Virus record (IMG/VR): IMGVR_UViG_3300035698_035366
Location: 232,120-296,119 of that record
DNA length: 64,000 bases
Strand: one strand, 5' to 3'
The position numbers were made by a program, and so were the translations under genes. Positions 27,663 through 64,000 of the stretch are shown piece after piece. Below the pieces are notes generated by a model. The model did no database searches, had not been told where the DNA came from, and worked only from the letters and a program-made list of their open reading frames with translations. Each line of letters opens with the position of its first letter. Position 1 is the stretch's first letter.

Positions 27663-28526
27663 ATGACAGGATACACAACAAGAATTGCACCAAGCCCAAC
27701 GGGTGATATGCACCTGGGGACCGCTCGCACGGCTTATTTCAATTGGCTGATGGCTCGAGCATCAGGTGGTAAATTCATTCTTCGTATTGATGATACTGAT
27801 CTCGCAAGGAACGATCAGAAACATATTGATATTATTCTAGAGACAATGGAGTGGCTTGGGTTAACTTATGATGAGCTAGAATATCAGAGCAAACGTATCG
27901 ATGTGTATTATCGAGCAACAAATGATCTTGTCAAAAAGGGATTTACGACTACATTAGAGAATGGTGCAATTGCTGTTAATCTATCTTCTGTGATTGATTT
28001 CCCAACCACATGGCGCGATGAGATTTCAGGTGATATTAATATCACATCAACCAACCACGATCAAACAGATGGTATGATTCTTATTAAAGGAAATGGATAT
28101 CCGGGTTACAATTGGGCTTCGGTGGTTGATGATGTTGATCTTGGTGTAGATTATATTATTCGAGGCCATGATCATATCACAAACACTTCAAGCCAAGCAA
28201 TTCTTTATAAGTTACTAGATAAGCCATTGCCCAAATTTGCGCATGTTGGTTTAATTCACGCCAATAAAAAGAAAATGTCCAAGCGTGATGGTGCTGCGAG
28301 TATGATGCAGTATAAAGCCGATGGGTATGATCCAGACGCATTGTTGAATTTTATGCTTCGTCTTGGATGGGGGCCAACTATCGACGATAAAACGACTAAG
28401 ACTATTGACAAGGATCGTGCATTAGAGTTGTTTATTAATGGTGGACGAATGCGATCCGCCCCATCAAATTTAGATACAGCAATGCTAAATTCATATGATA
28501 GAAAATATAAGGCTAGAAAGAAATAA
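27663..28526 (+). CDS. Minimal glutamyl-tRNA synthetase-like protein (catalytic domain only; GluQ-RS-like)
   Basis: RIAPSPTGDMHLGTARTA, LRIDDTD, IRGHDH, KMSKR; 287 aa, no Zn-cysteine cluster, no anticodon-binding domain. Confidence 0.88.
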   Translation: MTGYTTRIAPSPTGDMHLGTARTAYFNWLMARASGGKFILRIDDTDLARNDQKHIDIILETMEWLGLTYDELEYQSKRIDVYYRATNDLVKKGFTTTLENGAIAVNLSSVIDFPTTWRDEISGDINITSTNHDQTDGMILIKGNGYPGYNWASVVDDVDLGVDYIIRGHDHITNTSSQAILYKLLDKPLPKFAHVGLIHANKKKMSKRDGAASMMQYKADGYDPDALLNFMLRLGWGPTIDDKTTKTIDKDRALELFINGGRMRSAPSNLDTAMLNSYDRKYKARKK

Positions 28527-28950: not shown

Positions 28951-29361
28951 ATGTCATACAAAATTAGATACATACCGAATCTCATCGCGGCTCTTATAAC
29001 CAACACCATCGAGCCACCACCAGATAGAATGGTTGAGATACAAGAATGGTATGATCATATCAAAAAAAGCATATTAGAAGAAGGTTTCCGCAATCCCGTT
29101 GTCTTAACAGCAAAAGACGGTAAACTGGAACCACGTTATGGTGGTACAAGGGTTAAAATTGCACAAGAACACGGAATGAAAATACCAGCTATTATTGCAG
29201 ATTTTGATGATCAATTTCCCGAAGCTGAAACATTGGAAACATGGGAAGTTCCAGATAAATTCCTAGACAAACCAAAGAAAATACTCTTTAAGACCTATGG
29301 AATCAATGCTTCGGGCTTACCTGATACCGTAGAAGAATTCAATAAAAAACTTGACAAATAG
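28951..29361 (+). CDS. ParB/Srx-like domain protein
   Basis: SILEEGFRNPVVL...GGTRVKIA. Confidence 0.7.
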   Translation: MSYKIRYIPNLIAALITNTIEPPPDRMVEIQEWYDHIKKSILEEGFRNPVVLTAKDGKLEPRYGGTRVKIAQEHGMKIPAIIADFDDQFPEAETLETWEVPDKFLDKPKKILFKTYGINASGLPDTVEEFNKKLDK

Positions 29362-29409
29362 ATAAAACACTATACAATAGTTATTGTAATTATATAGAAA
29401 GATCGTATC

Positions 29410-30519
29410 ATGCGTATTGGAGAAATCGTAACGGTAGTTGTTTTTGTGTTTTTCATGTGTATCTCATATGGAGCAAACGCAACTGTAATCGGACAGAGCG
29501 AAGGCTTGTCTTTTATCAAAGCCGCCAATAACGCTCGCAGCGGGACGACAATGGATTTCCGCCAGCTTCAGAATTTTTTTAGCCCGACACAGGGAAACGA
29601 TAACCAGATTTTGAGCCGCACCGAAGCTCTTCTGGCGGAACTTGATGACGATGACAGCATCAAGCGGATATCGGTGATCGCAACCTTAATGCTTGAATCA
29701 GGAAAGGTTTATGAAGCCAACATTACAAACGGCTATCAGCTTTCCGTTGATAGCACGGGTTGGGATTTTGGTCCCAACGGTTCGCCTGTTCATAAGGATT
29801 TCCGTAAAGTAACTGAACATGATGTGGTATCTAGCGGATACGCTGTAAGCGATAACGATCTCGTTGACGGTCTTTCTGGAGTTCGAAATTTCTCAGATCG
29901 CGCAATCAACGGTGTTTATACTGTAACAGTCGTGTTTACTGGTCGGGATACGAAATTCGATACATTTGAAATTAATGGGTCTAACGTGATCGTTCGAAAC
30001 GTTAGTGAGATATCTAACCGTTTGGATATGACGAAACCAGGAGATGAGAAACTGCACAAGTCAATTGCAATTCGAACTTGGACAGTTGTAACTGAAAATC
30101 AGCTTAATGTTGCTTTCCCGAAGTTTCCTGAAAATTCCGTATTGTCGGCAATCATTATTACTCCAGTCAACATGCTACAGGTAATTGACCGTCGAGTTGA
30201 GGATTTGATCGACTCTCGCAAGCCGTTCGTGTACAATGCTGGTGGGTTTGGATCACGTAATGGATTTGATTATGGCATATCCCGATATTTTGCATACTCT
30301 AAGGATGGGTTCATCTCTACCCGAGGCCATGGTGGTTGCTGTAGTATCCCAGGCGATGATGGGCCATACGACGTACCGGTGTTTGTTCCTGGCGGAGACG
30401 GTGACCCAACCGATGTTCCAGGTATTACCATTCCAGGTACCGTTCCGGAACCCGGTGCGCTTGCACTATTCGGAATCGGCATTATTGGATTATTAATTAC
30501 TCGTCGTAGGAAAAAATAA
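29410..30519 (+). CDS. Secreted PEP-CTERM protein
   Basis: N-terminal signal peptide; C-terminal VPEPGALALFGIGIIGLLITRRRKK. Confidence 0.9.
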   Translation: MRIGEIVTVVVFVFFMCISYGANATVIGQSEGLSFIKAANNARSGTTMDFRQLQNFFSPTQGNDNQILSRTEALLAELDDDDSIKRISVIATLMLESGKVYEANITNGYQLSVDSTGWDFGPNGSPVHKDFRKVTEHDVVSSGYAVSDNDLVDGLSGVRNFSDRAINGVYTVTVVFTGRDTKFDTFEINGSNVIVRNVSEISNRLDMTKPGDEKLHKSIAIRTWTVVTENQLNVAFPKFPENSVLSAIIITPVNMLQVIDRRVEDLIDSRKPFVYNAGGFGSRNGFDYGISRYFAYSKDGFISTRGHGGCCSIPGDDGPYDVPVFVPGGDGDPTDVPGITIPGTVPEPGALALFGIGIIGLLITRRRKK

Positions 30520-30794
30520 TGTTTTACCTTTATTATGAAATATTTATAGGGCTCAAATCCGAACCTGAATATTATGTTGATAGCCATGAAGGTCCTGGGC
30601 TGTTTACTTTTACTAGAAAACGTGGTTCACTCAATACTACACAAATGGCTCATCGTATATGGGAACAGAACAGTGAAGATGGCTCTGTGAGATATCTAAA
30701 AAATAAATTAACAGAAGATCTAATTGTTGATATTGAAGAATTTAAAATAGTAAAATTATCAGCGTCAGAAGTATCACACGATTCTTTCAGGTAA
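30519..30794 (+). CDS. Hypothetical protein (paralog of 30801)
   Basis: Shared RIW.Q..DGS...LKN...VDIEEFKI.KLSASE. Confidence 0.7.
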   Translation: MFYLYYEIFIGLKSEPEYYVDSHEGPGLFTFTRKRGSLNTTQMAHRIWEQNSEDGSVRYLKNKLTEDLIVDIEEFKIVKLSASEVSHDSFR

Positions 30795-30800
30795 AAATAA

Positions 30801-31058
30801 ATGATAACATTATATTTTGAGATGCCAACAACTTGGGGTAGAGATCATATTGATTTCCTATATTACTATAAGGAAACTTCTAAATATTTAATTGAACCAT
30901 TACATTCTGTCCCGTTGGGTTATTCATATAAATCAACCCGTATATGGTTACAAAAAGAAGATGGTTCAATAATGTTTCTAAAGAATAGACATTCCGGACA
31001 CCAAACGGTTGATATTGAAGAATTTAAGATAATAAAATTATCAGCATCAGAAATTTAA
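30801..31058 (+). CDS. Hypothetical protein (paralog of 30519)
   Basis: Shared C-terminal motif. Confidence 0.7.
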   Translation: MITLYFEMPTTWGRDHIDFLYYYKETSKYLIEPLHSVPLGYSYKSTRIWLQKEDGSIMFLKNRHSGHQTVDIEEFKIIKLSASEI

Positions 31059-37477: not shown

Positions 37478-38086
37478 ATGGGCGGATGCGTTAATGTGTT
37501 TCTAAGAGACAAGGATCGAAACTTCCATCAGATGACGCGTTGGACAAATATATTGCCATCTTTTCTAGATTGCATTGGTAACGTAGAAGACGAAGATGAA
37601 CATCTCCAGGAATATATGGAGACCTGGTTTGAAATGAAAGAAGATTGGGAGAAGAATCGTCAGACCGCAGATTTCGAACACCCGATGACGTCGATGTATT
37701 TTCCCAGTCCAACAAAAATATGTCAATCAGAATATGGCTTGGTATTTGTTGATTATATAACGAAGACAATTGTTTCCTATCAGGATTATACTTCTATTGG
37801 GATTGTTAGCATAGCGGCAATTATGGTTTCGTATGACAATGATGAACGTGATCGCATTCTTAAAATTGCTGATGCTGGTAGAATATCTTACCAACCATTT
37901 ACTCTTGATATATCGAGTAGACGAAAGGTCGAAGACACTGCTCATATGGAACAATTGATTAAAGACCGAGAAGGTGACTTGCCACAATTTATTGTTGATA
38001 ATAGTCCTTGGAATATAATTGATTGTGATAAATGCGTAAGATTTACAAAGATAAAGTCCGGTATAAATCAAATTTTAGCGAAATAA
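37478..38086 (+). CDS. Hypothetical protein
   Basis: Promoter and RBS aaggag; 202 aa. Confidence 0.65.
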   Translation: MGGCVNVFLRDKDRNFHQMTRWTNILPSFLDCIGNVEDEDEHLQEYMETWFEMKEDWEKNRQTADFEHPMTSMYFPSPTKICQSEYGLVFVDYITKTIVSYQDYTSIGIVSIAAIMVSYDNDERDRILKIADAGRISYQPFTLDISSRRKVEDTAHMEQLIKDREGDLPQFIVDNSPWNIIDCDKCVRFTKIKSGINQILAK

Positions 38087-63685: not shown

Positions 63686-64000
63686 ATGGCTAGTGAAGAA
63701 ATACAGGAATTGTTGGACATTATCAAGGAAAACCAGACCATAATTGAAAATGTGGTTAGTGACATTATTAATCCATGTAAACAAAAAATCCACAATATAG
63801 AACAGCAAATAACAATTAAGATCGCCAACGATCTAAAAAATAAAAATCTTAAAGAACATGCCAATTTGAACCCAAATAATCTCCTATTGGGATTCTGGAA
63901 CTGTGAAGATAGCCCCACAGGTGAATGCGTGTATGATGAGTTCGATGACCCGATGAGCGATAATTGTTTATACTGTGGTGAACCCGATGAACGAAAATAA
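63686..64000 (+). CDS. Hypothetical Zn-binding protein
   Basis: WNCEDSPTGECVY...CLYCGEPDERK; RBS ggag. Confidence 0.65.
   Translation: MASEEIQELLDIIKENQTIIENVVSDIINPCKQKIHNIEQQITIKIANDLKNKNLKEHANLNPNNLLLGFWNCEDSPTGECVYDEFDDPMSDNCLYCGEPDERK

What the first reader, a model, noticed from the sequence alone, without database searches (positions are those of the whole stretch)
29410..30519. Phage-encoded PEP-CTERM surface protein
SEEN: signal peptide plus a textbook VPEP-TM-RRRKK tail. KNOWN: PEP-CTERM proteins are exosortase substrates tied to exopolysaccharide/floc formation in Gram-negative bacteria. INFERENCE: the phage uses the host exosortase to remodel the cell surface (superinfection exclusion, aggregation); this also constrains the host range.
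Basis: partly seen in the sequence, partly recalled or inferred. Interest (0 to 1): 0.6.

Follow-up and report, generated by a model that had tools for sequence, protein, structure and literature searches.

The report
Jumbo-phage gene for exosortase-sorted protein
A giant bacteriophage from salt-lake metagenomes carries a conserved gene, captured long ago from Alphaproteobacteria, for a secreted sugar-binding-type protein whose PEP-CTERM tail can only be processed by a host exosortase, so the phage probably plants its own protein in the host's surface slime layer.

Summary
Window 29410-30519 (+) is an intact 369-aa ORF with a cleavable-type signal peptide (residues 1-24). Its terminal PEP-CTERM domain (VPEP, hydrophobic helix, RRRKK) scores above the curated cut-offs of TIGR02595 and PF07589.

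It is a phage gene, not a chimera:
- The record is a jumbo myovirus related to Sinorhizobium phage Phosso and Agrobacterium phage Atu_ph07.
- The same locus was assembled independently in several salt-lake samples.
- A diverged sister phage keeps the gene and its neighbours (dN/dS 0.08).

That family is mostly alphaproteobacterial: 560-850 aa proteins that themselves end in PEP-CTERM tails. In Kordiimonas marina the homologue abuts a complete XrtA exopolysaccharide locus.

The domain folds as a four-helix bundle plus a galactose-binding-like β-sandwich. The phage copy is a shortened version that lacks the family's second β-sandwich.

No exosortase was found in about 316 kb of the phage, so dependence on a host XrtA is inferred. 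Expression and surface function could not be tested.

PEP-CTERM-tailed ORFs also turned up on nine other IMG/VR contigs. The phenomenon is therefore rare rather than unique, and I found no description of it in the literature.

The parts
29351..29378 (+). Sigma-70-type promoter-like site: TTGACA, 16 nt, TACAAT (11 of 12). It lies in the 48-nt gap before the gene, with the -10 element ending 32 nt before the ATG.
   Evidence: The motif TTGACA-N16-18-TAnAAT occurs 34 times on the + strand and 2 times on the - strand of the record. 23 of the 34 lie within 120 nt upstream of a + strand ORF start. No transcript data are available.
29396..29402 (+). Weak Shine-Dalgarno-like AGAAAGA, 7 nt before the ATG.
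   Evidence: Read from the sequence. Inference only.
29410..30519 (+). Coding sequence of the 369-aa PEP-CTERM protein (P0001), stop codon included.
   Evidence: dN/dS is 0.079 against the sister-phage copy in L006. An identical gene occurs in six contigs from salt-lake assemblies.
29410..29481 (+). Signal peptide, residues 1-24 (n-region Arg2, h-region 6-19, A-N-A|T cleavage motif).
   Evidence: Hydropathy. Conservation with P0002 begins at residue 23. Identity is 58% here against 89% in the next segment. No SignalP-type tool was available.
29500..29697 (+). Four-helix subdomain, residues 31-96.
   Evidence: AlphaFold2 model m42af9fba370a has helices at model residues 7-72 with pLDDT above 90. 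The segment aligns with the bacterial homologues. dN/dS is 0.025.
29704..30165 (+). Galactose-binding-domain-like β-sandwich, residues 99-252. It carries the family motif Y-x-L-x(3,4)-G-W-D-F-G-P ... D-G ... N-G-x-Y.
   Evidence: Model. VIA-align: YxiM N-terminal domain 2o14, Z 10.3, rmsd 2.9 Å over 119 residues; BuGUS-2 C-terminal domain 6d50, Z 9.5; CBM35 3zm8, Z 8.6. Foldseek E 3e-4. ESM Atlas leads to malectin and AGA-YXIM_GBD clusters.
30172..30438 (+). Low-confidence region, residues 255-343: a short helix, then a Gly/Pro/Asp-rich linker with a CC pair. It has indels between the two phage copies.
   Evidence: pLDDT is below 50. Identity to P0002 is 66% with gaps. No bacterial homologue aligns here.
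30439..30516 (+). PEP-CTERM sorting domain, residues 344-369: VPEP motif, transmembrane helix 348-365, RRRKK.
   Evidence: TIGR02595 28.1 bits (cut-off 16) and PF07589 28.7 bits (cut-off 20.7). It is the only hit in the record. VPEPG is invariant between the two phage copies while the linker before it has indels.
28951..29361 (+). Upstream neighbour, 136 aa, weakly ParB/methyltransferase-N-like. It is syntenic in the sister phage.
   Evidence: PHROGs E 2e-3 to 7e-3. PADLOC MTase_II E 5e-4. 78% identical in L006.
30519..30794 (+). Downstream neighbour, 91 aa, unknown function. Its start overlaps the stop of the PEP-CTERM gene. It is syntenic in the sister phage and has a paralogue at 30801-31058.
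   Evidence: 73% identical in L006.

Best explanation
The gene encodes a phage-borne substrate of a host XrtA-type exosortase.

**Shown**
- An intact gene under purifying selection lies inside a jumbo myovirus.
- The protein has a signal peptide, a four-helix plus galactose-binding-like β-sandwich domain, a flexible Gly/Pro linker and a canonical PEP-CTERM tail.
- The passenger domain is homologous to a mostly alphaproteobacterial family of PEP-CTERM proteins.
- The phage copy lacks that family's second β-sandwich domain.

**Inferred mechanism**
1. The gene is transcribed from its own sigma-70-type promoter by the host RNA polymerase.
2. The protein is exported by Sec and held in the inner membrane by the C-terminal helix.
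3. The host's exosortase recognises the tail and cleaves at the PEP motif.
4. The protein is passed to the cell surface or the exopolysaccharide (EPS) matrix.
5. There the β-sandwich binds a glycan, most likely the host's own XrtA-linked EPS.

**Most likely use to the phage**
As a shortened mimic of a host matrix protein, it alters the EPS or surface layer of the infected cell. The most likely effects are masking or re-organising the layer that incoming phages must cross (exclusion of competitors), or changing cell-cell aggregation.

**Consequence**
The host must be a Gram-negative bacterium with an XrtA/PEP-CTERM system, probably an alphaproteobacterium.
For: **Tail and signal peptide:**

**The gene is in a phage**
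- Terminase, portal, sheath, tube, baseplate and tail fibre lie in the same record.
- rIIB, homing endonucleases and 34 tRNA genes flank the gene.

**It is not a chimera**
- An identical locus occurs in six contigs from JGI and Logan salt-lake assemblies (four places shown), with more fragments in two further runs.
- The sister-phage fragment L006 is 74.5% identical in DNA, keeps gene order and gives dN/dS 0.079.
- Gene GC is 0.45 against 0.54-0.63 for the bacterial homologues. Codon usage is at the 71st percentile of phage ORFs of similar length.

**Bacterial family**
- The profile search gives E 1e-31 to 1e-8 over residues 30-256.
- Members end in PEP-CTERM tails.
- Named members are Alphaproteobacteria.
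- The phage pair nests in a 98/98-supported clade of that family.

**Link to the exosortase**
- PF09721 is present in 4 of 4 alphaproteobacterial carrier genomes. It is absent from the gammaproteobacterial MAG whose copy has no tail.
- In Kordiimonas marina the homologue lies about 2.7 kb from PrsT. It lies about 16 kb from XrtA (TIGR03109, 270 bits, cut-off 208) inside a complete XrtA EPS locus.

**No phage exosortase:**

**Fold:**

**Promoter:**

**Phage relatives infect Alphaproteobacteria:**
Against: - No RNA or protein data exist. All five holding runs are DNA.
- The host is unknown, so no cognate exosortase has been seen.
- About 46 kb of the 363-kb contig, and more of the 408-kb one, were not inspected.
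- Typical PEP-CTERM genomes hold many such proteins. The phage has one.
- The carbohydrate-binding reading rests on fold similarity only. Z 8-10 is modestly above the background of 7-8 stated by the tool. There is no Pfam CBM or malectin sequence match.
- The tree places the phage pair on a long branch (2.8) with deviant composition.
- The surface-remodelling role is inference by analogy.
Confidence: 0.55

Rival explanations
1. The protein is an exosortase-independent membrane anchor. The tail serves only as a C-terminal transmembrane helix with a positive-inside stop-transfer. The protein then stays tethered to the inner membrane facing the periplasm, for example as an injection-blocking or periplasmic glycan-binding protein, and never reaches the surface.
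For: - The phage has no exosortase.
- It has only one PEP-CTERM protein.
- Signal peptide plus C-terminal helix plus basic cluster would give this topology by default.
- Known phage exclusion proteins act in the inner membrane or periplasm (general knowledge, not tested here).
Against: - VPEPG is invariant between two phage copies whose adjoining linker has indels and 66% identity.
- The tail scores twice the curated cut-off of the PEP-CTERM model.
- The whole bacterial family it derives from keeps the tail and co-occurs with exosortase.
Confidence: 0.2
2. The gene is an assembly chimera or a host flank of a prophage. It would then belong to a bacterial chromosome joined to phage DNA, as the IMG/VR 'provirus' label might suggest.
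For: - IMG/VR classes the record as a provirus.
- The parent contig (407,795 bp) is longer than the record.
- The homologues are bacterial.
Against: - The gene lies about 33 kb inside the trimmed end, with phage genes on both sides.
- Six contigs from JGI and Logan assemblies carry the identical locus (four places shown).
- A diverged sister phage keeps the synteny.
- Composition and codon usage are phage-like.
- The ~20 kb beyond the trim is more phage-style DNA: small same-strand ORFs, EF-Tu, EF-Ts, an RF-1 domain protein and metabolic genes. There is no integrase or core bacterial neighbourhood.
Confidence: 0.03
3. The gene is a decaying passenger: a captured host fragment with no role for the phage, and the tail is a relic.
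For: - It is truncated relative to the bacterial family.
- There is no PHROG family for it and no relative in cultured phages.
Against: - dN/dS is 0.079 with dS saturated at about 1.7, and the frame is intact in both lineages.
- It has its own near-consensus promoter.
- Its composition is ameliorated, which implies long residence.
Confidence: 0.05
4. The phage supplies its own sorting enzyme. An exosortase would be encoded in the part of the genome not examined, making the system host-independent.
For: Only about 316 kb of a 363-408 kb genome was examined. CheckV puts the record at 79% complete.
Against: - Two exosortase models find nothing in 296 kb.
- No PF09721 appears among the called genes of the next ~20 kb.
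- No literature precedent was found for a phage exosortase.
Confidence: 0.03

Closest known systems
PEP-CTERM/exosortase (XrtA) system substrates of Gram-negative bacteria (TIGR02595, PF07589; for example the floc protein PepA of Zoogloea, NF033554)
   Same: - Signal peptide.
- Passenger domain followed by a low-complexity linker.
- Terminal VPEP motif, helix and basic cluster scoring above curated cut-offs.
- Bacterial homologues sit in genomes with XrtA, and in Kordiimonas beside the XrtA EPS locus.
   Different: - It is encoded by a jumbo phage that has no exosortase and no other PEP-CTERM protein.
- It matches PepA and other named subfamilies only in the tail: 31.9 bits against a cut-off of 80.
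Unnamed, mostly alphaproteobacterial family of 560-850 aa PEP-CTERM proteins (P0003, P0004, P0007-P0009, P0014; Kordiimonas marina ORF L033:9740-12283)
   Same: - The N-terminal four-helix plus β-sandwich domain is homologous, E down to 1e-31 with 24-32% identity and the GWDFGP motif.
- The tail is of the same type.
- The phage copies nest within the family tree.
   Different: - The phage protein is 369 aa.
- It lacks the long Ala/Pro/Ser-rich spacer and the second β-sandwich domain.
- It has low GC and a long branch.
- No Pfam or NCBIfam model exists for the shared domain.
Galactose-binding-domain-like / CBM35 / CBM6 / malectin β-sandwiches (YxiM N-terminal domain 2o14; BuGUS-2 C-terminal domain 6d50)
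   Same: Jelly-roll fold of residues ~108-254: Z 10.3 and 9.5, rmsd 2.9-3.5 Å over 119-124 residues. Foldseek probability 1.00.
   Different: - 12-19% identity, and no Pfam CBM or malectin hit.
- Ligand-binding residues were not assessed.
- The preceding four-helix bundle has no counterpart in these structures.
Phage-encoded substrates of other host surface-sorting pathways, such as prophage-borne LPXTG sortase substrates (SasX of S. aureus) and phage lipoproteins used for exclusion (T5 Llp). Recalled from memory, not tested here.
   Same: The logic is the same: the phage supplies only the cargo with a sorting signal, and the host machinery installs it in the envelope. The known roles are aggregation, colonisation or exclusion.
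   Different: The sorting pathway differs (exosortase rather than sortase or Lol). The virus is a lytic-type jumbo myovirus rather than a temperate phage. No function has been demonstrated.
PEP-CTERM domain protein HOG10 of Dehalococcoides IME1 elements (bioRxiv 10.64898/2026.09.15.751708)
   Same: It is the only mention I found of a PEP-CTERM domain on a virus-like mobile element.
   Different: The element type is different (an integrative element with features of a filamentous or budding virus). That paper does not mention an exosortase (zero occurrences of the word). No sequence relation was tested.

Membership tests
PEP-CTERM exosortase substrates (TIGR02595 / PF07589) | PEP motif, hydrophobic helix and basic cluster at the extreme C-terminus, scoring above the curated cut-off | tested here: met
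   TIGR02595 28.1 bits (cut-off 16). PF07589 28.7 bits (cut-off 20.7). Residues 344/345-369 are the last residues of the protein. The six-frame scan gives 32.1 bits.
PEP-CTERM exosortase substrates (TIGR02595 / PF07589) | N-terminal signal peptide for Sec export | tested here: met
   Arg2, hydrophobic residues 6-19 (Kyte-Doolittle 2.67) and A-N-A|T. Conservation between the phage copies starts at the predicted cleavage site. This was judged by sequence features, with no dedicated predictor.
PEP-CTERM exosortase substrates (TIGR02595 / PF07589) | An exosortase gene in the same genome | tested here: not met
   PF09721 and TIGR02602 find nothing in the 296-kb phage record or in the next ~20 kb. 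The relevant genome is the host's, which is unknown. All four alphaproteobacterial genomes tested that carry a tailed homologue have an exosortase.
PEP-CTERM exosortase substrates (TIGR02595 / PF07589) | Exosortase-dependent cleavage and sorting of the protein | not testable with these tools
   This needs biochemistry. The one complex prediction gave no verdict.
PEP-CTERM exosortase substrates (TIGR02595 / PF07589) | Several PEP-CTERM paralogues per genome (the usual pattern) | tested here: not met
   There is a single hit in the phage record.
Unnamed GWDFGP-domain PEP-CTERM family (mostly Alphaproteobacteria) | Homologous N-terminal helical plus β-sandwich domain | tested here: met
   hmmsearch E 1.4e-31 (P0003) to 1e-10 over query positions 30-256. 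Alignment A3. The phage pair is nested in a 98/98 clade.
Unnamed GWDFGP-domain PEP-CTERM family (mostly Alphaproteobacteria) | Long low-complexity spacer plus a second C-terminal β-sandwich domain before the tail | tested here: not met
   Both are absent from the 369-aa phage protein and present in P0003, P0004, P0007-P0009.
Unnamed GWDFGP-domain PEP-CTERM family (mostly Alphaproteobacteria) | Genomic association with an XrtA EPS locus | tested here: inconclusive
   The association is adjacent in Kordiimonas marina. In the MAGs the exosortase is on other contigs. P0003 has an ordinary chromosomal neighbourhood. The feature does not apply to the phage.
Flocculation protein PepA (NF033554) and other named PEP-CTERM subfamilies | Full-length match above the curated cut-off | tested here: not met
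   31.9 bits against a cut-off of 80, with only tail residues 344-369 matching. The same holds for EDSAP-1, THxN and XDP1.
Carbohydrate-binding modules of the galactose-binding-like superfold (CBM6 / CBM35 / malectin / AGA-YXIM_GBD) | β-jelly-roll fold | tested here: met
   Z 10.3 (2o14), 9.5 (6d50) and 8.6 (3zm8) over ~115-125 residues. Foldseek E 3e-4.
Carbohydrate-binding modules of the galactose-binding-like superfold (CBM6 / CBM35 / malectin / AGA-YXIM_GBD) | Sequence membership in a CBM or malectin Pfam family | tested here: not met
   Pfam reports only PF07589 for the phage protein and its homologues.
Carbohydrate-binding modules of the galactose-binding-like superfold (CBM6 / CBM35 / malectin / AGA-YXIM_GBD) | Demonstrated glycan binding | not testable with these tools
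   This needs a binding assay.
Integrated prophage (the IMG/VR 'provirus' label) | Bacterial chromosomal genes flanking the viral region | tested here: not met
   The ~20 kb past the trimmed end holds small same-strand ORFs, EF-Tu, EF-Ts, an RF-1 domain protein, PRPP synthetase and similar genes in phage-like arrangement. The far ends of the parent contig were not seen.

The most novel reading that the evidence does not exclude
Phages exploit the exosortase pathway as a delivery route. This jumbo phage deploys a truncated mimic of a host EPS-matrix protein through the host's XrtA to re-engineer the infected cell's slime layer, either blocking rival phages or changing floc formation. It would be the best-documented member of an overlooked class of virus-encoded exosortase substrates. 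That class also appears on other large phage contigs and on Mu-like phages in IMG/VR (L039, L042, L043-L047).
Probability: 0.3. Interest if true: 0.65.

Novelty: new member of a known kind. Interest (0 to 1): 0.45.

Why it matters
PEP-CTERM/exosortase sorting is widespread in environmental Gram-negative bacteria but is still poorly understood mechanistically.

- **A minimal model cargo.** A phage that carries only a cargo is a natural, small (369 aa), single-domain substrate. It could serve as a tractable model for studying XrtA processing.
- **A host marker.** The gene marks the host of an uncultured ~360-410 kb phage as an XrtA-positive bacterium, probably an alphaproteobacterium.
- **Ecology.** If the protein alters EPS or aggregation, phage infection could influence floc or biofilm structure in these lakes.
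- **An uncharacterised family.** The work also defines a bacterial domain family (four-helix plus galactose-binding-like sandwich, GWDFGP motif) that no Pfam or NCBIfam model matched.

Tried and rejected
- **First structure prediction.** With only the two phage sequences the model was unusable (pLDDT 31.5). It was superseded by the 23-sequence alignment.
- **Relatives in cultured phages.** tblastn of the protein against 50,697 phage records found nothing.
- **Relatives in IMG/VR.** A pattern scan with the full-length alignment found no relatives. A nine-sequence tail alignment was too variable to scan with.
- **PHROGs and PADLOC.** Neither has a family for the protein.
- **Complex prediction.** The Kordiimonas XrtA (residues 1-300) was run against the phage tail (residues 325-369). 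The verdict was 'no answer' (score 0.03). This is not evidence either way.
- **Whole-contig search.** Searching the 363-kb JGI contig via its locus handle failed because the record is not held. I therefore walked only ~20 kb past the window and stopped, so as not to hold more of that metagenome record.
- **Expression.** No RNA run holds the gene. Laying contigs on it shows presence only, with no variants.
- **Sample provenance.** No paper mentions the sample or run identifiers. The Ace Lake paper describes other huge phages and could not be tied to these contigs. I recall the JGI sample series as Antarctic saline lakes, but this is unverified. I give the habitat only as 'salt lake metagenome'.
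- **A corrected guess.** I first thought the 202-aa ORF of L006 matched window 37478-38086. It does not.
Full report
**1. The observation**

Window 29410-30519 (+) is a single open frame of 369 codons with an ATG start. It is the first start after the upstream stop.

The N-terminus has the parts of a Sec signal peptide:
- Arg2.
- A hydrophobic core at residues 6-19 (Kyte-Doolittle maximum 2.67).
- An A-N-A|T peptidase motif at residues 22-25.

The C-terminus reads VPEP, then an 18-residue hydrophobic helix (348-365), then RRRKK and the stop. TIGR02595 scores 28.1 bits against a cut-off of 16. PF07589 scores 28.7 bits against 20.7. Both match up to the last residues. Named PEP-CTERM subfamilies (PepA, EDSAP-1, THxN, XDP1) match only the tail and stay far below their cut-offs. 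A six-frame scan of the whole record finds this one site only (32.1 bits).

**2. Where the gene lies**

The window is the last 64 kb of a 296,119-bp IMG/VR record labelled 'provirus'. CheckV estimates the record at 79% complete.

The rest of the record encodes clear phage hallmark genes:
- Large terminase.
- A portal gene that carries an HNH insertion.
- Tail sheath, tail tube, baseplate wedge and hub, and tail fibre.
- DnaB-like helicase, SbcC and an EF-G-like factor.

The window itself holds 34 tRNA genes, a truncated class-Ic tRNA-synthetase-like gene, T4 rIIB, T4-endonuclease-V-like and homing-endonuclease genes.

The closest cultured phages are:
- Sinorhizobium phage Phosso: terminase 56% identical, baseplate wedge 41%.
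- Agrobacterium phage Atu_ph07: 51% and 40.5%.
- After those, PA5oct and RaK2.

The record is therefore a jumbo myovirus of the Atu_ph07/RaK2-like assemblage.

**3. Chimera or prophage flank?**

The evidence says neither.
- The protein is encoded, letter for letter and with the same neighbours, on six contigs read from JGI assemblies (one of 362,903 bp) and Logan assemblies, four of which were shown. The longest contig on record is 407,795 bp.
- Contigs from two further salt-lake runs cover parts of the locus at 100% identity.
- A 3.6-kb contig from an unrelated run (L006) carries a copy that is 76-79% identical in protein and 74.5% in DNA. It keeps the order 136-aa gene, PEP-CTERM gene, 91-aa gene, tRNA region.
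- Between the two copies dN/dS is 0.079 with dS saturated at about 1.7. The helical part gives 0.025 and the sandwich 0.088.
- Gene GC is 0.45. Phage ORFs average 0.38 with a standard deviation of 0.05. The bacterial homologues are at 0.54-0.63. Codon usage is unremarkable for this phage.
- Past the IMG/VR cut, the parent contig continues for at least 20 kb in the same style of small same-strand ORFs. It holds PRPP synthetase, an AIR-synthase-like gene, aldehyde dehydrogenase, a carbamoyltransferase, thioredoxin, an RF-1 domain protein, EF-Tu and EF-Ts.

The 'provirus' trim therefore looks like CheckV reacting to cellular-type genes in a huge phage.

**4. What the protein is**

The word-index search found only the sister-phage copy, and the family scans explained only the tail. 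This justified the exhaustive profile search. It found 36 proteins at E up to 1e-3, of which 13 reach E up to 1e-10. About a dozen (P0003-P0012, P0014) align to query positions ~30-256 at E 1e-31 to 1e-10, and further members are weaker.

The complete members share one architecture:
- 560-850 residues in length.
- A signal peptide, then the shared domain.
- A long Ala/Pro/Ser/Gly-rich spacer.
- A second domain of about 170 residues.
- A PEP-CTERM tail.

Named genome hits are Alphaproteobacteria MAGs, a Rhodospirillaceae MAG and Kordiimonas marina. There is also one Gammaproteobacteria MAG, whose copy has a different architecture and no tail. P0005 is annotated as coming from an Alphaproteobacteria MAG. 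No Pfam or NCBIfam model matches the shared domain.

In a maximum-likelihood tree the two phage proteins form one long branch inside a 98/98-supported clade of the alphaproteobacterial proteins. They are sister (94/85) to P0003 plus P0005. The long branch and skewed composition call for caution. The simplest reading is an old capture from a bacterium of this group, followed by loss of the spacer and the second domain.

**5. Link between the family and the exosortase**

All four alphaproteobacterial genomes tested that carry a tailed homologue encode an exosortase (E 1e-55 to 1e-61). The gammaproteobacterial MAG with the tail-less copy shows none.

In Kordiimonas marina the homologue (scaffold positions 252,287-254,830) lies about 2.7 kb from PrsT, at the edge of a full XrtA locus. 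That locus holds PrsT, the chain-length determinant TIGR03007, the outer-membrane protein TIGR03016, FemAB TIGR03019, the stp1 glycosyltransferase, XrtA (TIGR03109, 270 bits, cut-off 208) with an EpsI domain, and the amidotransferase TIGR03108. All score above their cut-offs. P0003, by contrast, sits in an ordinary chromosomal neighbourhood, so the linkage is not universal.

**6. Fold**

With the 23-sequence alignment, AlphaFold2 gives pLDDT 79.6 and pTM 0.77 for residues 25-320.
- Four helices span protein residues 31-96.
- A β-sandwich spans residues 99-252.
- The region 274-310 is disordered.

The sandwich matches galactose-binding-like modules:
- YxiM N-terminal domain: Z 10.3, rmsd 2.9 Å over 119 residues.
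- The C-terminal CBM-like domain of Bacteroides uniformis β-glucuronidase 2: Z 9.5.
- CBM35: Z 8.6.
- The malectin-like domain of FERONIA: Z 8.0.

Foldseek (E 3e-4) and the two Atlas searches agree. The top matches stand only modestly above the tool's stated background of Z 7-8. The fold class is well supported, but glycan binding is inferred. The helical bundle found no match. The second domain of the bacterial proteins, absent from the phage, looks like another small β-sandwich that is also found in short PEP-CTERM proteins (a lead only).

**7. Expression signals**

A TTGACA-16-TACAAT site (11 of 12) lies in the 48-nt gap upstream. Overall counts of promoter-like sites in that region equal the shuffled expectation. 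The strict motif, however, is strongly strand-biased in this genome: 34 on the coding strand against 2 on the other. 23 of the 34 lie within 120 nt upstream of ORF starts. This suggests a genuine class of host-RNA-polymerase promoters. No RNA run holds the gene, so expression remains untested.

**8. Mechanism**

Shown:
- The cargo architecture.
- Bacterial ancestry.
- Purifying selection.
- Absence of an exosortase from the phage DNA examined.

Inferred from what is established for PEP-CTERM/XrtA systems:
- Sec export.
- Retention by the C-terminal helix.
- Recognition and cleavage by the host exosortase.
- Delivery to the surface or EPS.

I commit to the view that the protein is a shortened mimic of a host EPS-associated protein that the phage installs in the infected cell's surface layer. 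The first candidate effect is shielding against further phage adsorption. The second is altered aggregation. The specific role has no direct evidence.

The main rival is an exosortase-independent inner-membrane anchor. It is weakened by strict conservation of VPEPG next to a variable, indel-bearing linker, and by the family's consistent association with exosortase.

**9. How unusual is it?**

- Phosso, Atu_ph07 and PA5oct have no PEP-CTERM tail.
- PHROGs has no family for the protein.
- A deliberately narrow tail pattern nevertheless found nine more IMG/VR contigs with small, signal-peptide-bearing, PEP-CTERM-tailed ORFs. Two lie on 94-kb and 153-kb contigs among helicase, SbcD and homing-endonuclease genes. 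A 110-124 aa family recurs on five high-GC contigs, one of which (L044) carries a Mu-like transposase next to it.
- Literature searches found no description of phage-borne exosortase substrates. The only related item is a 2026 preprint noting a PEP-CTERM domain on Dehalococcoides IME1 elements.

The protein passes every sequence test for a PEP-CTERM protein, so I file it as a new member of a known kind in an unusual carrier. It is moderately interesting. It mainly serves as a host marker, as a minimal model cargo, and as a pointer to an overlooked class of phage genes.

**10. Operator notes**

Read laying was given 3,601 letters. No alternative genetic code and no spliced model were used. Nothing required referral.

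Noticed in passing
window 12763-47018: There are 34 tRNA genes, all on the + strand, covering 17 amino-acid specificities. They include duplicates (Asp-GTC x2, Ile-GAT x2, Gln-TTG x2, Met-CAT x3). This is a very large tRNA island even for a jumbo phage.
   Followed up: no
window 27663-28526: A 287-aa ORF matches the class-Ic (Glu/Gln) tRNA-synthetase catalytic domain (PF00749) and phrog_35649. It is much shorter than a full GluRS, so it may be a YadB-like glutamyl-Q-tRNA synthetase or a truncated enzyme.
   Followed up: partly
window end and beyond (L048, L050; Ga0222664_1000004 positions 297-317 kb): The IMG/VR 'provirus' boundary at window position 64000 looks like over-trimming. The parent contig continues with PRPP synthetase, an AIR-synthase-like gene, aldehyde dehydrogenase, glucosaminidase, a carbamoyltransferase, thioredoxin, an RF-1 domain protein, EF-Tu and EF-Ts. 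These lie among small same-strand ORFs.
   Followed up: partly
G000 whole record; window 29351-29378 is one instance: The strict promoter motif TTGACA-N16-18-TAnAAT occurs 34 times on the + strand and 2 times on the - strand. 19 of the 34 lie in record positions 235-290 kb, the tRNA and small-ORF region. This suggests a block of genes dependent on the host RNA polymerase, possibly early genes.
   Followed up: partly
window 30519-30794 and 30801-31058: Two adjacent small ORFs (91 and 85 aa) are paralogues sharing a C-terminal D-I-E-E-F-K-I-[VI]-K-L-S-A-S-E motif. The first overlaps the stop codon of the PEP-CTERM gene and is conserved in the sister phage.
   Followed up: no
L039:5302-6102, L042:5356-6075, L041:190-849, L043-L047: Other IMG/VR contigs encode small signal-peptide proteins with PEP-CTERM-like tails. 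L039 (266 aa) lies on a 153-kb contig and L042 (239 aa) on a 94-kb contig, both among phage replication and homing-endonuclease genes. A 110-124 aa family recurs on five high-GC contigs. Only L044 was checked, and it has a Mu-like transposase nearby.
   Followed up: partly
G000:C1:63043-66045 (L013): The 1000-aa portal ORF matches the portal family in two stretches, with an HNH-endonuclease match at residues ~436-540 between them. This suggests an intein or an in-frame homing-endonuclease insertion.
   Followed up: no
G000:C1:25498-37923: There is a single 4,141-aa ORF on the minus strand, next to the baseplate genes. It was not analysed.
   Followed up: no
G000:C1:87486-89609 (L016): A 706-aa ORF matches phrog_6880, 'translation elongation factor' (E 5e-124). 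Together with the EF-Tu, EF-Ts and RF-1 domain genes on the parent contig, this indicates an extensive translation gene set.
   Followed up: no
L053 (Kordiimonas marina scaffold, 255,000-274,900) and L033:9740-12283: The Kordiimonas homologue ends in a variant tail, V-P-A-P-A-G instead of VPEP, with a long basic stretch. It scores below the Pfam and NCBIfam PEP-CTERM reporting thresholds, yet lies next to a complete XrtA locus. It may be a divergent sorting signal.
   Followed up: partly
L035:7014-9638: A Gammaproteobacteria MAG has the GWDLGP β-sandwich at residues ~170-400 of an 874-aa protein with no PEP-CTERM tail. The structure search points to clusters of proteins with a GH123-type C-terminal domain, so the domain also occurs in a possible glycoside-hydrolase context.
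   Followed up: no
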